A stretch of DNA of 64,000 nt from Obrimoposthia wandeli (lineage: Eukaryota): contig CDROCS010000253.1 of NCBI GenBank assembly GCA_977020255.1, positions 868,001-932,000 of the forward strand, read 5' to 3'. Both the position numbers and the translations under genes were made by a program. This document shows, piece after piece, positions 22,823-26,700 of the stretch. The notes under the pieces were generated by a model, which had not been told where the DNA came from, ran no database searches, and saw only the letters and a program-made list of their open reading frames with translations. How positions within the stretch are numbered: the first letter of the stretch is position 1; each line of letters starts with the position of its first letter.

Positions 22823-23077
22823 TCACCATGTGATCACAAAATTATGCTGAGCAATACTATTTCCTAATGCCTCGAGTGTTTTTACTTCACTTAAAAGCAG
22901 TTGATGGGTTTTAATACCGTCATTAATGTTTAGATATTCTTGCCTTTCAACAAGTTTGATATCGGTTGCTATGCCATTGTATTTTTTATTATCCTTGGTC
23001 GTCACCTCAATTAGGCTCCGGCGCATACAGACAATTTCAAAATAGTCATGGGCATCACAACTTATCTTATTTGCCAT
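22823..23077 (-). CDS. rof: Rho-binding antiterminator (Rof/YaeO family)
   Basis: ISCDAHDYFEIVC N-terminal motif and 84-aa length. Confidence 0.8.
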   Translation of the reverse strand: MANKISCDAHDYFEIVCMRRSLIEVTTKDNKKYNGIATDIKLVERQEYLNINDGIKTHQLLLSEVKTLEALGNSIAQHNFVITW

Positions 23078-23150: not shown

Positions 23151-23402
23151 TTATAAACGAATAATACTATACCCCTGACTAGCGATATTATCTTGCACCT
23201 CAAGGTTAGCAAGTTCACTATGGCAAAAATTGCAGCGGCTTTGCTTAATATTATTTATTTCCACGCCTAAACTCGCGAGATACTGTTTAGCATATTGCTC
23301 TACCTCCTTAATATTTTCATTATTCACCAAAACATCAAAATGGATATATTGACCTGACGCTGTCATTACATGGGTATCAAAAACATGTATTTGCATACTC
23401 AT
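23151..23402 (-). CDS. DUF2024-family protein
   Basis: IHVFDTHV, HFDV, AKQYL and CNFCHSE motifs. Confidence 0.8.
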   Translation of the reverse strand: MSMQIHVFDTHVMTASGQYIHFDVLVNNENIKEVEQYAKQYLASLGVEINNIKQSRCNFCHSELANLEVQDNIASQGYSIIRL

Positions 23403-23415
23403 TGCTCCTACTAAA

Positions 23416-24162
23416 TTATTTACTTTGGCCGGGTAAACTTAAATCACCAGATGCGACATCAAATACATCGGTAATACACAGTAAAGGCGCATGTACTTGC
23501 TGGTTTATTTTTAAACCTGAGGTAACACCATCAAAAGAAAAGCTTTCTGGAAAACCAAGTGAAGATAGAGGCACTCGCACTAAGACTTCAGATTGCGCTA
23601 AAGTAAAATCAAATCCAGGACTGTCAATAAAGATGGGTAAATTTGGCCAAGTCAGCGGTAATTTAGGTGAGCTACCGTGAGCAATATCTTTAACTTTTAA
23701 AGCGCCTTCACCACAAGCATTATCTGGCACAAGAACTACCCAGTGACTATGCCATTTATCTCCGTCGTTGGTTTTGTTGCCATCGCCATCTTCATCATAC
23801 AAAGGGGTGTCATCGAAGTCAGGATGCACTGTTAAAGCTAAAGAGAGAATGCCTTGATCCGCTTCAAAACCTACTGCAGAACTATTAAGTGACGTTGGCC
23901 ATACATAACTATAGACCTCGGCGCCTGCTAACTGACCCTTTTTTTTGGGCTGTTTATTACCAACTTTACCGGTTACCGCTTGTTGGAATATTAAATGACT
24001 ACCTTGGGTAATTACCTTGGCATGAACAATATCAAACTCACTAGCAATGGCCGAAGAAGTGGGTGCTTGAATATGACCACTGTGCTTGTTGTGGGCATAT
24101 GTAGTTGTTGTCAGCAGCACTGTGCTCAGGGTTGCTGCGATAAATAGGTGTGAAGTTTTCAT
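23416..24162 (-). CDS. Secreted uncharacterised protein with His/Asp motifs
   Basis: Signal peptide followed by AHNKHSGH; YSYVWPT, HPDFDDTPLYDEDGDG, WHSHWVVL, TWPNLP and IDSPG. Confidence 0.85.
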   Translation of the reverse strand: MKTSHLFIAATLSTVLLTTTTYAHNKHSGHIQAPTSSAIASEFDIVHAKVITQGSHLIFQQAVTGKVGNKQPKKKGQLAGAEVYSYVWPTSLNSSAVGFEADQGILSLALTVHPDFDDTPLYDEDGDGNKTNDGDKWHSHWVVLVPDNACGEGALKVKDIAHGSSPKLPLTWPNLPIFIDSPGFDFTLAQSEVLVRVPLSSLGFPESFSFDGVTSGLKINQQVHAPLLCITDVFDVASGDLSLPGQSK

Positions 24163-24223
24163 GATTAATCCTTTTAGTTAATTTAACTAAGTGCTTAACA
24201 CTTAATTTGTCTTATTTCGCTCA

Positions 24224-24248
24224 AAGTAGTTTCGATTCGAAACTACTT
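24224..24248. promoter_or_regulatory. Perfect 25-bp palindrome AAGTAGTTTCGA-T-TCGAAACTACTT, candidate MarR operator
   Basis: 12-bp perfect arms with a 1-nt centre in the divergent intergenic region; degenerate half-site TCGATACTA at 24293-24301. Confidence 0.75.
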
Positions 24249-24308
24249 ATATTTAAGCATAATAAAACTCTACTTGTCAAATCTGTTTTGACTCGATACT
24301 ATTGGGGG

Positions 24309-24863
24309 ATGAATGATGAACTATTTAATTTAATCGAGCGTTTAGCTAATTTATTACGGCAAGAAACGCGACTTGAAGGGCAAAGCTTAGGGTTACAACC
24401 TATACAGCAGGAGGCTCTGTATTATCTGTCGACTTGTAATCGTTATTCAGATACCACCTTAGCGGTCACTGAATTTTTAGGCTTAACCAAAGGTACAGTA
24501 TCACAATCGTTAAAAATTCTAGAAAGCAAAGCCTTGATTGTTAAAGTAAAAGACAAAAAAGATAAGCGTATTATCCATTTAAAAGTGACTGAGGCAGGTC
24601 ATGAATTTTTGATGAAAACCTGCCCACCGCAAAAGTTTACTGACGCTATCACCAGTTTGTCTGTTGATGAAGAGTTTGAGACCAAAAAATTACTAACAAA
24701 AGTATTAAGTAACTACCAACATGCTACAGGGCGAACTGCCTTTGGGGTTTGTCAGCATTGTAAATTTAATCGCAAGACAAGTGACGGAATTTTATGTGAG
24801 TTAACCAAAGAGACGTTAAGTAGTGATGACATCATGCTGATCTGTAGAGAGTATGTCGTTTAA
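24309..24863 (+). CDS. MarR-family regulator with C-terminal Cys4 extension
   Basis: LQPIQ...LGLTKGTVSQSLKILESK...DKR..HLKVTEAG winged HTH; C-x2-C-x11-C-x15-C tail. ATG at 24309 preferred to the track start at 24207, which runs through the operator. Confidence 0.88.
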   Translation: MNDELFNLIERLANLLRQETRLEGQSLGLQPIQQEALYYLSTCNRYSDTTLAVTEFLGLTKGTVSQSLKILESKALIVKVKDKKDKRIIHLKVTEAGHEFLMKTCPPQKFTDAITSLSVDEEFETKKLLTKVLSNYQHATGRTAFGVCQHCKFNRKTSDGILCELTKETLSSDDIMLICREYVV

Positions 24864-24885: not shown

Positions 24886-25596
24886 CTAACCCGCTTGGTC
24901 TAACAATCGGAAACTCCAGTTTTCTACCTCGTTGCTTACTAGGCGCTGCACAACTTTTTCCATCCAACTGCTGGATAACCGGCCTTGTTTTTTTAATACC
25001 AGCAGCTTCTCGTTATTGAGTGGATCACCAAAAAATGTCTCACATACCGCAGTAATTGTCATGGCATTGGCAACTCTGTCAATTAACTCAAGTGGTTCAT
25101 TCACACTGACCATTCCTGGCTGAATAACACGATATAACCAGCCACAGCGACTAATGTCCTGCATGTCGACCGATAAATGTTCGATACCCCAACGTTTATT
25201 TAGTTTAAAACAAGGAGAACGTGGCTGACTCACTTCGATAATCGCTTCTCCCCATTGGTAGCGATCGCCCAAAAAAACAGTCTGTTCAGTCATGCCTATT
25301 GAACTAAGGTTTTCACCCATACCTGCCGCTTGCCAATTAACCTTCTGGGCAGATGTCTCCATACAGTTAGTACCATATTTTTCCTGCCAATAGGCATAGT
25401 GTTCCGCTGGGTATTGATGTAACGCACGTTCGAACCCGCCATGATGAAGTTTATCGGCACACTCATCACCTGCTAATCCTTCAAGTGATAAATACAAACG
25501 TGTGTTGACCGGATGCTTTTCTATCGCGGTTTCAATACCGTAGCGCTCTGCCACCTTTCCGCAGAAAACATTATTTAGGTAGTATTGACTTTGCAT
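24886..25596 (-). CDS. MOSC-domain protein (YiiM-like, with 3-alpha domain)
   Basis: GLAGDECAD..HHGG.ERALHQY, GENLS, GDRYQWG, EVSQPRSPCFKL and GWLYRVIQPG. Confidence 0.9.
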   Translation of the reverse strand: MQSQYYLNNVFCGKVAERYGIETAIEKHPVNTRLYLSLEGLAGDECADKLHHGGFERALHQYPAEHYAYWQEKYGTNCMETSAQKVNWQAAGMGENLSSIGMTEQTVFLGDRYQWGEAIIEVSQPRSPCFKLNKRWGIEHLSVDMQDISRCGWLYRVIQPGMVSVNEPLELIDRVANAMTITAVCETFFGDPLNNEKLLVLKKQGRLSSSWMEKVVQRLVSNEVENWSFRLLDQAG

Positions 25597-25686
25597 GTAT
25601 CAGCCCTTTTTTCTTAATAATATACATATTAATAATGAGTGTATTAATTATATAGCCAGCAGCTCTTGATCTTTCACGGTTAGGTT

Positions 25687-26700
25687 TTATGGTAATACGT
25701 GCCCTCTTGCGCAAAGCCACAATGCGTACCAATGCTCTCTAGTTAAGTCGATGTTATCAACTTCTACACAGGCTTTAATACGCTCAACATTGGTGGTACC
25801 AATAACGGGTTGAATATTCGCAGGATGACGCTTTAACCACGATAATACTACGGCTTCTTTACTCACCTGATATTCAGCCGACAACTTCGTAACCAATTCT
25901 GCCGTTTTCTGAATGTGAAGCGGTTCTTGAGAAATTTCACGTCCGGTAAATATGCCTTGGCTTAAGCAACCCCATGATTGCAGCTGAACATTGTTTTTTC
26001 GGCAATATTCAATGGTACCTGCACCATAGTTTACAGACGGTTCTCCCGCGTTTCCTGACGTTACACCTTCTTCTACCCAAGCTAAATGGCTTAAGCTGAG
26101 TTCAACTTGGTTGACGACTAAAGGTTGTGACAATGCTGATGATAAAAATGCCATTTGATGATGCTGCATATTCGAAACACCAAAGTTTTTAACTTTTCCG
26201 CTAACAGATAACGTATCAAAAGCTTGGGCAACTAATTCAGGTTCCATGAGGGGATCGGGGCGATGAAGCATTAATATATCTAATTGCTCTATGTTTAACC
26301 GAGACAGACTCTTTTCAACTGAATTGATAATCCACTCAGGTGAACAGTCATAACGCTGGGGTCCTAAATTATCTTCAAATCTAATGGCGCATTTTGATTG
26401 AATAGAAATTAACGCTCGTAATTCAGGACGTGCTTTTAATACTTCACCAAAAACTTGTTCAGCTTTACCGAAAGTATAAATATCCGCATGGTCAAAAACC
26501 TTAATACCTGCATCGATAGCTGCATCAACAACTTCGTGGGCTTTTTTTATATCGACTGCACTAATAGGATTTTTATCCCAAGTGCCGCCTAATCCCATAC
26601 AGCCAAAGACAATCGAGCTATTGTTTTTTATTACGCGAGATAACGGGTATTTATTACTGTTCATGTAAATTCCTATAGAAACTATACCAATAGGACTCAT
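25687..26700 (-). CDS. Aldo/keto reductase (YdhF/YcsN-like); start may be the ATG at 26664
   Basis: FGCMGLG, FDHADIY, QSKC, LHRPDPL, FGVSN, NQVE and PVIGTT. Confidence 0.92.
   Translation of the reverse strand: MSPIGIVSIGIYMNSNKYPLSRVIKNNSSIVFGCMGLGGTWDKNPISAVDIKKAHEVVDAAIDAGIKVFDHADIYTFGKAEQVFGEVLKARPELRALISIQSKCAIRFEDNLGPQRYDCSPEWIINSVEKSLSRLNIEQLDILMLHRPDPLMEPELVAQAFDTLSVSGKVKNFGVSNMQHHQMAFLSSALSQPLVVNQVELSLSHLAWVEEGVTSGNAGEPSVNYGAGTIEYCRKNNVQLQSWGCLSQGIFTGREISQEPLHIQKTAELVTKLSAEYQVSKEAVVLSWLKRHPANIQPVIGTTNVERIKACVEVDNIDLTREHWYALWLCARGHVLP

What the first reader, a model, noticed from the sequence alone, without database searches (positions are those of the whole stretch)
23151..24863. 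Candidate undescribed stress/metal system: Cys4-tailed MarR controlling a secreted His/Asp protein and DUF2024
Seen: a MarR with an extra C-x2-C-x11-C-x15-C tail is divergent from a two-gene unit (13-bp gap). The unit encodes a secreted protein with AHNKHSGH, HPDFDD, a DEDGDGN Ca-loop-like segment and WHSHW, then DUF2024 with H..D.H, H.D and C-x2-CH. All three carry metal-ligand clusters and I know no function for either target. Inference: a metal- or thiol-redox-sensing regulon with a periplasmic binder or enzyme and a cytoplasmic partner. rof lies just downstream on the same strand and may be co-regulated.
Basis: partly seen in the sequence, partly recalled or inferred. Interest (0 to 1): 0.72.

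Follow-up and report, generated by a model that had tools for sequence, protein, structure and literature searches.

The report
Cys4-tailed MarR redox-stress operon, undescribed
A Colwellia regulator of the MarR type with an extra four-cysteine tail sits next to, and almost certainly represses through two palindromic DNA sites, a small operon for an exported protein of an uncatalogued but widespread family, a small metal-binding protein and the cell's only Rof (Rho inhibitor); this gene set recurs across many bacterial phyla beside thiol-redox enzymes, so it is probably an unstudied oxidant-stress system.

Summary
It is far more than chance.

- **Exported protein ("SEC"):** the 248-aa protein belongs to a large, very conserved family. 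The word search gave 5,424 clusters, with 55-60% identity across phyla. It has no Pfam, NCBIfam or PDB sequence match.
- **Linkage to the regulator:** in 64 of 80 SEC loci from several phyla, a MarR whose four tail cysteines are invariant (60/60) lies next to SEC.
- **Other recurrent neighbours:** DUF2024 (36 loci), Rof (19), a CPGC redoxin (19), a CPVC thioredoxin-like protein (17), GATase, MOSC and an AhpD-like protein.
- **Operator:** I found a 15-bp palindrome, GTWTCGANTCGAWAC. Two copies lie between marR and SEC and nowhere else in the window. In two clean Colwellia genomes the only perfect match lies at this locus. The palindrome is present in 40 of 44 divergent-type loci.
- **Second lineage:** where the MarR is co-directional with SEC, a different palindrome is used, ATAGGANTCCTAT.
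- **Regulator swapping:** where the MarR is missing, SEC is paired with RclR-like AraC, HxlR/Rrp-like or LysR regulators.

Best reading: an autoregulated repressor that senses thiol-oxidising stress through its Cys4 tail. Whether the tail holds Zn or an Fe-S cluster is unresolved. A metal-homeostasis reading is weakly supported. SEC has a DOMON/Glucodextran_C-like beta-sandwich fold, and its function remains unknown. No paper on this system turned up in my searches of the held library.

The parts
24309..24863 (+). MarR-family repressor (184 aa) with a C-terminal Cys4 module (C148, C151, C163, C179). The mechanical ORF starts at TTG 24207; the real start is probably ATG 24309.
   Evidence: Pfam MarR_2/HTH_27. 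Foldseek matches MarR structures at E 3e-7 over the ~140-residue core only. The four Cys are invariant in 60/60 neighbours of SEC and in sequences down to 20% identity. Homologues are 184 aa.
24285..24299 (.). Operator B, GTTTTGACTCGATAC (1 mismatch to GTWTCGANTCGAWAC). It lies 10-24 nt upstream of the marR ATG, inside a -35/-10-like pair (TTGTCA-17-TACTAT).
   Evidence: A second, weaker site about 55 bp from the first recurs in most divergent-type loci.
24224..24248 (.). Operator A: a perfect 12+12 inverted repeat, AAGTAGTTTCGA t TCGAAACTACTT. Its core, GTTTCGATTCGAAAC (24229-24243), lies 67-81 nt upstream of the SEC start codon.
   Evidence: With operator B, these are the only two hits (<=2 mismatches) in the 64-kb window. 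In loci there were 64 hits in 19.8 kb upstream of the MarRs against 21 in 855 kb elsewhere. In two clean Colwellia genomes the only perfect match lies at this locus.
23416..24162 (-). SEC: an exported 248-aa protein of an uncatalogued family. The predicted fold is a beta-sandwich of DOMON/CBM9/Glucodextran_C type. It has an invariant HPDFDDTPL.DE..DG...DG..WH.HW block, H224 and two invariant Cys.
   Evidence: No Pfam, NCBIfam or PDB sequence hit. The word search gave 5,424 clusters. Alignment A1. AF2 pLDDT 72.6, pTM 0.74. VIA Z 8.1 to 1ulv and 7.6 to 2ivf_C. Atlas TM 0.53/0.61 to a cluster in which 20% of members carry Glucodextran_C. Family members carry Por_Secre_tail or PEP-CTERM tags.
23151..23402 (-). 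DUF2024 small cytoplasmic protein with a conserved D9/H21/D23/C57/C60/H61 cluster. The likely start is ATG 23396 (81 aa).
   Evidence: Pfam PF09630 E 2e-29. PDB 2HFQ E 4e-16. Conservation. Shine-Dalgarno spacing. Present in 36/80 SEC loci.
22823..23077 (-). Rof-family protein (84 aa), same strand, 73 bp downstream of DUF2024, with no terminator-like site between them.
   Evidence: Pfam ROF 59 bits. No terminator found. Adjacent to DUF2024 in 19 loci. It is the only Rof-family gene in each of four genomes checked.
24886..25596 (-). YiiM-like MOSC protein, convergent with marR. It is a frequent neighbour of the cluster but has no operator of its own here.
   Evidence: Pfam MOSC, and NCBIfam 6-hydroxyaminopurine reductase at 218 bits, below the cut-off of 294. 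Present in 11/80 loci. In a SEC-less genome (L116), MOSC plus a redoxin lie divergent from a Cys4-MarR with an operator.

Best explanation
This is a dedicated, single-locus stress regulon.

**Regulator and DNA sites.** A MarR-type dimeric repressor binds two 15-bp palindromes (GTWTCGA-N-TCGAWAC) in the 146-bp divergent promoter region. Through them it represses its own gene and the operon SEC-DUF2024-rof.

**Sensor.** The regulator carries an about 40-residue C-terminal module with four invariant cysteines. I take this module to be the sensor. It most likely holds a metal centre, either a Zn(Cys)4 thiolate site or an Fe-S cluster. Thiol-oxidising agents (reactive chlorine species, disulfide stress, possibly NO or peroxide) would attack that centre and release the repressor from DNA.

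**Induced products.**
- SEC, an exported, probably Ca-stabilised beta-sandwich with an invariant His/Asp cluster. It would act in the periplasm; its function is unknown.
- A small cytoplasmic Cys2His-type metal-binding protein (DUF2024).
- Rof, which would damp Rho-dependent termination during the stress.

**Shown here:** gene linkage, residue conservation, the operator motif and its specificity, and the folds.

**Inferred:** repression, the sensing chemistry, the inducing signal and every effector function.
For: **Linkage**
- The MarR is next to SEC in 64/80 loci. These loci come from Gamma-, Alpha- and Betaproteobacteria, Deinococcota, Gemmatimonadota and Nitrospinota; the SEC-bearing Chloroflexota locus has a LysR regulator instead. 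Gene order and orientation vary between them.
- In 81 genomes of one bacterial family, SEC occurs in 6 and the Cys4-MarR in 9. Those 9 include all 6 SEC genomes, each with the MarR within 5 kb.

**Sensor module**
- The four tail Cys are invariant in 60/60, even in sequences 20% identical to the query.
- The AF2 model gives a confident MarR core and a small beta-hairpin tail.
- No solved MarR structure covers the tail.

**Operator**
- There is a perfect 25-bp inverted repeat plus a second site in the window, and no other hits in 64 kb.
- The motif is present in 40/44 divergent-type loci, about 130-fold enriched.
- In two clean Colwellia genomes the only perfect match lies at this locus.
- Co-directional-type loci carry their own palindrome, ATAGGANTCCTAT, directly after a TTGAC element. 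There were 15 hits just upstream of the MarRs against 5 elsewhere, and 4 of those 5 lie within the cluster.

**Signal**
- Recurrent neighbours are CxxC proteins: a CPVC thioredoxin-like protein, a CPGC redoxin and an AhpD-like protein.
- Cys4-MarRs without SEC sit beside the thioredoxin-like gene (Budvicia) or beside MOSC plus a redoxin.
- SEC genes without the MarR are paired with RclR-like AraC/Cupin_6, HxlR (RrpA/B-like) or LysR regulators.

**Expression**
- Contigs of a marine metatranscriptome cover rof, the SEC/DUF2024 junction in one piece, the 5' end of SEC, and marR. This is weak evidence.
Against: - No experiment exists. Repression, the inducer and the metal content are all inferred.
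- A Cys4 site in a regulator can be purely structural, as in Fur/PerR (my own knowledge).
- The neighbouring redox enzymes are absent from the Colwellia locus itself.
- The regulators that replace the MarR match RclR and RrpA/B far below the equivalog cut-offs. Calling them reactive-chlorine sensors is therefore only an analogy.
- The tail is modelled at only pLDDT 57-74.
- SEC's function is unknown, and its fold matches are in the range where chance similarity is common (Z <= 8.1).
Confidence: 0.5

Rival explanations
1. Metal-homeostasis regulon. The Cys4 tail binds a cognate metal (Zn, Cu, Cd, Ni...) as an allosteric effector, as the MarR-type zinc sensors AdcR/ZitR do with their own sites. 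SEC would be a periplasmic metal binder and DUF2024 a cytoplasmic metal buffer.
For: All three proteins have conserved His/Asp/Cys clusters. DUF2024 is labelled 'metal-binding protein' in an archaeal dark-matter survey (PMC6393860). SEC has a DxDxDG-like loop.
Against: None of the recurrent neighbour families in the 80 loci was a metal transporter, efflux pump, P-type ATPase or metallochaperone; the recurrent neighbours are thiol oxidoreductases, MOSC and GATase. The alternative regulators are not metal-sensor families. The AdcR model scores 24 bits against a cut-off of 175. SEC's N-terminal His-rich stretch is not conserved.
Confidence: 0.15
2. Ligand-responsive detoxification regulon. The Cys4 module is only a structural zinc site. 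The MarR responds to a small organic molecule (an electrophile, quinone or N-hydroxylated compound) in the usual MarR ligand pocket, and the operon belongs with the neighbouring MOSC/aldo-keto reductase detoxification genes.
For: Most MarRs sense small ligands (my own knowledge). A YiiM-like MOSC and an aldo-keto reductase lie beside marR, and MOSC recurs in 11/80 loci. Structural Cys4 zinc sites are common in regulators.
Against: The tail is the only feature that separates this subfamily from other MarRs, and it is invariant across phyla while the core diverges to 20% identity. The neighbours are dominated by CxxC proteins rather than catabolic enzymes. In Colwellia, MOSC carries no operator.
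Confidence: 0.2
3. Chance adjacency: an ordinary MarR that happens to lie next to unrelated hypothetical genes.
For: MarR genes are numerous, and divergent arrangements with neighbours are common.
Against: Linkage in 64/80 loci across phyla, 6/6 within one bacterial family, a shared operator motif, and an invariant tail.
Confidence: 0.02

Closest known systems
Thiol-based redox-sensing MarR repressors (OhrR, MgrA/SarZ, OspR, MosR, HypR)
   Same: A winged-helix MarR dimer, autoregulated from a divergent promoter with palindromic operators, next to antioxidant or thiol-redox genes. Cysteines are the likely sensor.
   Different: Those proteins use one or two cysteines inside the MarR core, near the N-terminal helix. 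This one has a separate C-terminal CxxC-x11-17-C-x15-C module that no solved MarR covers. The OhrR model scores 27 bits against a cut-off of 200.
ArnR, a wHTH regulator with a C-terminal [4Fe-4S] sensory domain (PMC12343034); also MsvR
   Same: A MarR/ArsR-like wHTH, then a dimerisation helix, then a C-terminal Cys-ligated metal centre that controls DNA binding.
   Different: ArnR has three Cys, spread over about 45 residues of a larger TRAPPC3/V4R-like domain, and is actinobacterial. Here there are four Cys in an about 35-residue hairpin module. MsvR scores 15.6 bits against a cut-off of 220.
RclR-rclABC reactive-chlorine response of E. coli
   Same: In Beta- and some Gammaproteobacteria, SEC plus the redoxin lie divergent from an AraC/Cupin_6 regulator whose best NCBIfam match is RclR. 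The system includes an envelope component.
   Different: No RclR or rclABC is present in Colwellia. The AraC regulators score 81 bits against a cut-off of 400, so they are relatives, not orthologues.
DOMON-like beta-sandwiches: Glucodextran_C (PF09985), EB_dh heme-b subunits, CBM9, and the cellobiose dehydrogenase cytochrome domain
   Same: Best fold matches: 1ulv C-domain Z 8.1, 2ivf_C Z 7.6, 7b04_C 6.9, 1i82 6.4, 1d7c 5.6; Atlas TM 0.53/0.61. These are extracytoplasmic ligand-binding sandwiches.
   Different: There is no sequence relationship: no Pfam hit, and hhalign probability 0.05 against a Glucodextran_C alignment (four wrong-frame rows were left in that alignment). The invariant HPDFDD...WHSHW block was not matched by any Pfam, NCBIfam or PDB sequence model searched.
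Rof (YaeO) of E. coli, inhibitor of Rho
   Same: Pfam ROF 59 bits; the two conserved Cys are present (C7, C17).
   Different: It scores 28 bits against 117 for the E. coli equivalog. Here it lies inside a MarR-controlled stress operon; in E. coli it is known in a different gene context (my own knowledge).

Membership tests
MarR family | Winged helix-turn-helix domain recognised by MarR profiles | tested here: met
   MarR_2 29.4 bits (cut-off 27) and HTH_27 30.8 bits (cut-off 22.2). There were 38 PDB MarR hits by sequence.
MarR family | MarR fold (dimerisation helices plus wHTH) | tested here: met
   AF2 core pLDDT about 90. Foldseek E 3e-7 to 1e-6 to MepR and ST1710, TM by target 0.64-0.76.
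MarR family | Palindromic operator in its own promoter region | tested here: met
   GTWTCGANTCGAWAC occurs twice upstream of marR and is conserved in 40/44 divergent-type loci. Binding itself was not tested.
OhrR/MgrA-type 1-Cys or 2-Cys redox MarR | Reactive Cys in the N-terminal helix of the core; match to the OhrR model | tested here: not met
   OhrR NF052638 scores 27 bits against 200. The only core Cys (C43) is conserved in the gamma-type proteins only (40/60).
AdcR/ZitR zinc-dependent MarR | Match to the AdcR family model | tested here: not met
   NF038251 scores 24 bits against 175.
DUF2024 (PF09630) | Full-length match over the gathering score | tested here: met
   101.6 bits against 27, covering profile positions 1-81 of 81. 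PDB 2HFQ E 4e-16.
Rof (PF07073) | Pfam match over the gathering score | tested here: met
   59 bits against 27.6.
Rof (E. coli equivalog NF008636) | Score over the equivalog cut-off; Rho binding | tested here: not met
   28 bits against 117. Rho binding is not testable with these tools.
Glucodextran_C / DOMON-like superfamily | Sequence-profile similarity | tested here: not met
   No Pfam hit at E <= 0.01. hhalign probability 0.05 against 24 Glucodextran_C domain rows, four of them wrong-frame. No PDB profile hit at E <= 10.
Glucodextran_C / DOMON-like superfamily | Shared beta-sandwich fold | tested here: inconclusive
   VIA Z 8.1-5.2 to several DOMON-type domains. These stand first in the list but lie in the range the tool calls common. 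Atlas TM 0.53/0.61 over 153 residues. Foldseek against PDB gave nothing at E <= 0.001.
RclR regulon | RclR orthologue controlling the genes | tested here: not met
   There is no AraC regulator at the Colwellia locus. RclR-like regulators occur only at SEC loci of other lineages, and they score below the cut-off.

The most novel reading that the evidence does not exclude
A new class of bacterial redox sensor: a MarR whose C-terminal Cys4 metal-thiolate or Fe-S module reads oxidant stress. On induction it switches on two things at once. One is a previously uncatalogued exported metalloprotein family for envelope protection. The other is the cell's only Rof, which would tie oxidative stress directly to a global relaxation of Rho-dependent transcription termination.
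Probability: 0.2. Interest if true: 0.8.

Novelty: new variant of a known kind. Interest (0 to 1): 0.62.

Why it matters
- It defines three linked unknowns that can be tested together: a MarR subfamily with a new sensor module, an exported protein family with thousands of members and no catalogue entry, and DUF2024.
- It supplies the operator sequences needed for EMSA and reporter work.
- If the tail is a Zn-thiolate or Fe-S switch, that adds a new sensing architecture to the MarR family.
- If Rof is truly under this control, it gives a physiological signal for Rho inhibition, which I believe is poorly understood (my own knowledge).
- SEC is patchily distributed (about 1% of sampled gammaproteobacterial species) yet 55-60% identical across phyla. 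This suggests a mobile accessory function under strong constraint.

Tried and rejected
- **Foldseek of the SEC model against PDB:** nothing at E <= 0.001.
- **PDB sequence and profile searches for SEC:** no hit even at E 10.
- **hhalign of the SEC alignment against Glucodextran_C domains** taken from Deinococcota genomes: probability 0.05. Four wrong-frame rows were left in that alignment, so the test is slightly weakened.
- **Distant SEC relatives from the big search:** they carry only sorting tags or unrelated fusions, with no known domain.
- **Atlas search with the MarR tail alone:** no usable hit.
- **Literature searches** for DUF2024, NE1496, Gll3595, MarR with 4Fe-4S, and MarR with CXXC or a C-terminal extension: nothing on this system.
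- **Operator search in the window's own assembly:** uninformative. G000 is a 1.35-Gb assembly, and the other perfect matches that were fetched lie in low-GC or repeat DNA, for example L088. The same search in clean Colwellia genomes was informative.
- **Even sample of 100 gammaproteobacterial genomes:** too sparse for co-occurrence statistics, with SEC in only 1.
- **Laying reads:** only contigs were available, so no transcript ends, strand or expression levels could be read.
- **SEC promoter:** I could not place a convincing sigma-70 promoter by eye or by scan.
Full report
**What is there.**

The window region 22.8-24.9 kb encodes four genes.
- On the minus strand: an exported 248-aa protein (SEC, 23416-24162), DUF2024 (23151-23402) and a Rof-family protein (22823-23077).
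- On the plus strand, divergently: a MarR-family regulator, ORF 24207-24863.

Pfam confirms DUF2024 (E 2e-29), ROF (E 5e-16) and weak but above-threshold MarR/HTH_27 matches. SEC matches nothing in Pfam or NCBIfam.

By sequence against the PDB, DUF2024 matches the uncharacterised NMR structure 2HFQ (E 4e-16). The regulator matches many MarRs. SEC matches nothing, even as a profile at E 10.

I make two small corrections.
- Homologues of the regulator are 184 aa and start MNDELF, so the start is ATG 24309 rather than TTG 24207.
- The Shine-Dalgarno AGGAG before DUF2024 is placed for the second ATG (23396), and M3 is the conserved start in 36/37 homologues.

The organism is a Colwellia. The locus is 96% identical in protein to C. 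demingiae and C. psychrerythraea, and earlier notes of this scan also call the genome Colwellia. The contig lies inside a 1.35-Gb, 6,912-contig assembly, so it is a bacterial passenger in a eukaryote-sized assembly.

**SEC is a large, tight, uncatalogued family.**

- The word search returned 5,424 clusters with E <= 0.001. The best 120 were 60-96% identical to the query, and wherever a source gave a name it was only 'hypothetical' or 'Gll3595 protein'.
- The exhaustive profile search found 403 representatives at 50% clustering. That is few because the family is so conserved. Some are tandem doubles of 454-556 aa.
- In a 30-sequence alignment, the block HPDFDDTPL-x-DE-x2-DG-x4-DG-x2-WH-x-HW is invariant, as are H224 and two cysteines, C150 and C229. 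The N-terminal AHNKHSGH stretch is only partly conserved.
- All members have a signal peptide or lipobox. Some carry Por_Secre_tail or PEP-CTERM tags, so the family is extracytoplasmic.
- AlphaFold2 gives an all-beta sandwich (pLDDT 72.6, pTM 0.74). The acidic DEDGDGNKTNDG loop is modelled poorly, as expected for a loop that orders on Ca2+ (the Ca2+ idea is my inference from the DxDxDG-like pattern).
- Foldseek finds nothing in the PDB.
- The exhaustive VIA search puts DOMON-type sandwiches first: glucodextranase C-domain Z 8.1, ethylbenzene dehydrogenase gamma 7.6, NxrC 6.9, CBM9 6.4, cellobiose dehydrogenase cytochrome 5.6, and the dopamine beta-hydroxylase DOMON domain 5.2.
- The ESM Atlas points the same way, to Glucodextran_C: feature score 0.79 and TM 0.53/0.61.
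- A profile-profile test against Glucodextran_C domains gave probability 0.05.

I therefore call this a fold-level resemblance only, not family membership.

**The genes are a conserved unit.**

I fetched 80 SEC loci from named genomes. I then searched them with the window's proteins and clustered all their ORFs. The recurrent neighbours were:

| Neighbour of SEC | Loci (of 80) | Position or note |
|---|---|---|
| Homologous MarR | 64 | adjacent to SEC |
| DUF2024 | 36 | |
| Rof | 19 | always beside DUF2024; sometimes between DUF2024 and SEC |
| Redoxin with CPGC and a C-terminal CDDxGC | 19 | just downstream of SEC |
| 80-aa thioredoxin-like protein with CPVC | 17 | just upstream of SEC |
| Class-I glutamine amidotransferase | 12 | |
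| YiiM-like MOSC | 11 | |
| AhpD-like CxxC protein | 8 | |

Families were identified.

Two architectures exist.
- In Gammaproteobacteria (and in the Nitrospinales locus) the MarR is divergent from SEC.
- In Alphaproteobacteria, Deinococcota and most of the Gemmatimonadota loci it is co-directional and upstream.

Within 81 species of the Colwellia-containing family, SEC occurs in 6 and the Cys4-MarR in 9. Those 9 include all 6 SEC genomes, and in each the MarR is within 5 kb of SEC.

SEC is rare overall. It was found in 1 of 100 evenly sampled gammaproteobacterial species. The family is therefore patchy but highly conserved.

**The regulator's tail.**

C148, C151, C163 and C179 are invariant in all 60 full-length MarRs next to SEC. 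They are also invariant in a 33-sequence alignment that reaches 20% identity. A fifth cysteine, C43, is conserved only in the gamma type.

The spacing is CxxC-x11-17-C-x15-C. In the second lineage there is a conserved His beside the third and fourth Cys.

AF2 models a confident MarR core (pLDDT about 90) and a lower-confidence tail (57-74) with three short strands.

Foldseek aligns only the ~140-residue core to solved MarRs. None of them has the tail. The Atlas gave no named relative for the tail. No name more specific than 'MarR family' is attached to any homologue.

**The operator.**

The intergenic region holds a perfect 12+12 inverted repeat at 24224-24248. Its core, GTTTCGATTCGAAAC, recurred in other loci, which led to the consensus GTWTCGANTCGAWAC.

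- With up to two mismatches, the consensus hits the 64-kb window only twice: at 24229 (perfect) and 24285 (one mismatch). Both lie between the two genes.
- In the fetched loci it hits 64 times in the 19.8 kb just upstream of the MarRs, against 21 times in the other 855 kb.
- Many of those 21 are still inside the cluster, for example before the thioredoxin-like gene.
- 40 of the 44 divergent-type loci have it, usually as two sites about 55 bp apart.
- In two clean 5-Mb Colwellia genomes the only perfect match is at this locus. In one of them the two local sites are the only hits at up to one mismatch.
- Site B lies within a -35/-10-like pair for marR, which fits autorepression.
- The co-directional lineage uses a different palindrome, ATAGGANTCCTAT, directly after a TTGAC element. 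There were 15 hits just upstream of the MarRs against 5 elsewhere, and 4 of those 5 lie within the cluster.

I therefore regard 'MarR-type repressor with a dedicated local regulon' as well supported, although binding was not tested.

**What the signal might be.**

- Everything that recurs in the neighbourhood is cysteine chemistry: CPVC, CPGC, AhpD-type CxxC, the C-x2-CH of DUF2024, and the paired Cys of Rof.
- Cys4-MarRs without SEC sit beside the thioredoxin-like gene in Budvicia. In another genome they sit beside MOSC plus a redoxin, with an operator.
- SEC genes without the MarR lie divergent from other regulators:
  - AraC/Cupin_6 regulators, whose best NCBIfam match is the reactive-chlorine regulator RclR;
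  - HxlR-type regulators, whose best matches are the Campylobacter redox regulators RrpB/RrpA;
  - LysR regulators.
- No recurrent neighbour is a metal transporter or chaperone.

This swapping of regulators points to oxidant or electrophile stress rather than metal homeostasis.

The sensing chemistry is open. The candidates are a Zn(Cys)4 thiolate switch (as in RsrA or Hsp33, my own knowledge) or an Fe-S cluster. ArnR is a described precedent for a wHTH plus a C-terminal Cys-ligated [4Fe-4S] (PMC12343034). A purely structural zinc site remains a serious rival.

**Rof.**

In four genomes checked (three of the Colwellia-containing family and one Pseudomonas fluorescens), the only Rof-family gene is the one in this operon. 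If the operon is induced by stress, Rho inhibition would be part of the response. This is inference only.

**Expression.**

Only assembled contigs were available. A marine metatranscriptome holds contigs 90-97% like the locus. They cover:
- rof;
- the DUF2024/SEC junction, in one piece (23359-23701);
- the 5' end of SEC, up to 24210;
- marR.

This is compatible with transcription and co-transcription, but it does not prove either.

**Literature.**

Searches for DUF2024, NE1496, Gll3595 and for MarRs with Fe-S or CxxC tails found nothing on this system. DUF2024 appears once, as a 'metal-binding protein' conserved in Thaumarchaeota. The library lacks most subscription journals, so absence there is not proof of novelty.

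**Verdict.**

The 'conserved undescribed stress system' claim holds. The redox reading is favoured over the metal reading. The biochemical functions of SEC and DUF2024 remain unknown.

In kind, this is a new variant of the known redox-sensing MarR regulon. What is new is a sensor module, an uncatalogued exported effector family, and a possible link to Rho control.

Noticed in passing
whole window / G000: The window's assembly has 1.35 Gb in 6,912 contigs, so this Colwellia contig (C253, >930 kb) is a bacterial passenger in a eukaryote-sized assembly. A second contig (C4567) carries the same locus from another Colwellia strain, with proteins 84-97% identical (MarR 95%, SEC 97%).
   Followed up: partly
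window 22823-23077; G001, G279, G281, G002: In four genomes checked, the only Rof-family gene of the genome is the one inside this MarR-linked operon. This hints that Rho inhibition is tied to the stress this regulon senses.
   Followed up: partly
window 24297-24311: The -10-like TACTAT of the marR promoter candidate ends 7 nt before the ATG, and GGGGG abuts the start codon. The marR mRNA may therefore be leaderless or have a very short leader.
   Followed up: no
loci L014, L026, L052, L057, L068, L072, L075 (upstream of the MarR): The co-directional MarR lineage (Alphaproteobacteria, Deinococcota, Gemmatimonadota) uses a different palindrome, ATAGGANTCCTAT, placed right after a TTGAC -35-like element.
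   Followed up: partly
G270:C65:71758-73053; G275:C1:2547604-2548914; P0233, P0235, P0240: Some species encode a tandem-duplicated SEC (two SEC domains in one 454-556 aa protein), still next to the Cys4-MarR.
   Followed up: no
L117:3245-3619(-), L118:4430-4837(+): In SEC-less genomes of the Colwellia-containing family, Cys4-MarRs with operator-like sites lie divergent from small ORFs (124 and 135 aa) that have no Pfam match. These may be further effectors.
   Followed up: partly
L120:9080-9493(+): A DUF4399 protein sits between the redoxin and DUF2024 in one SEC cluster.
   Followed up: no
Deinococcota genomes G003-G153: A Glucodextran_C (PF09985) protein is present in 147 of 151 sampled genomes of the phylum. 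Most have one match, in open frames of about 230-420 aa (a few longer); some Thermus-size genomes have an additional copy in a ~1000-aa open frame.
   Followed up: no
window 24886-26700: A YiiM-like MOSC gene (218 bits, below the 6-hydroxyaminopurine reductase cut-off of 294) and an aldo-keto reductase gene lie in tandem on the same strand, convergent with marR. MOSC recurs near the cluster in 11/80 loci.
   Followed up: partly
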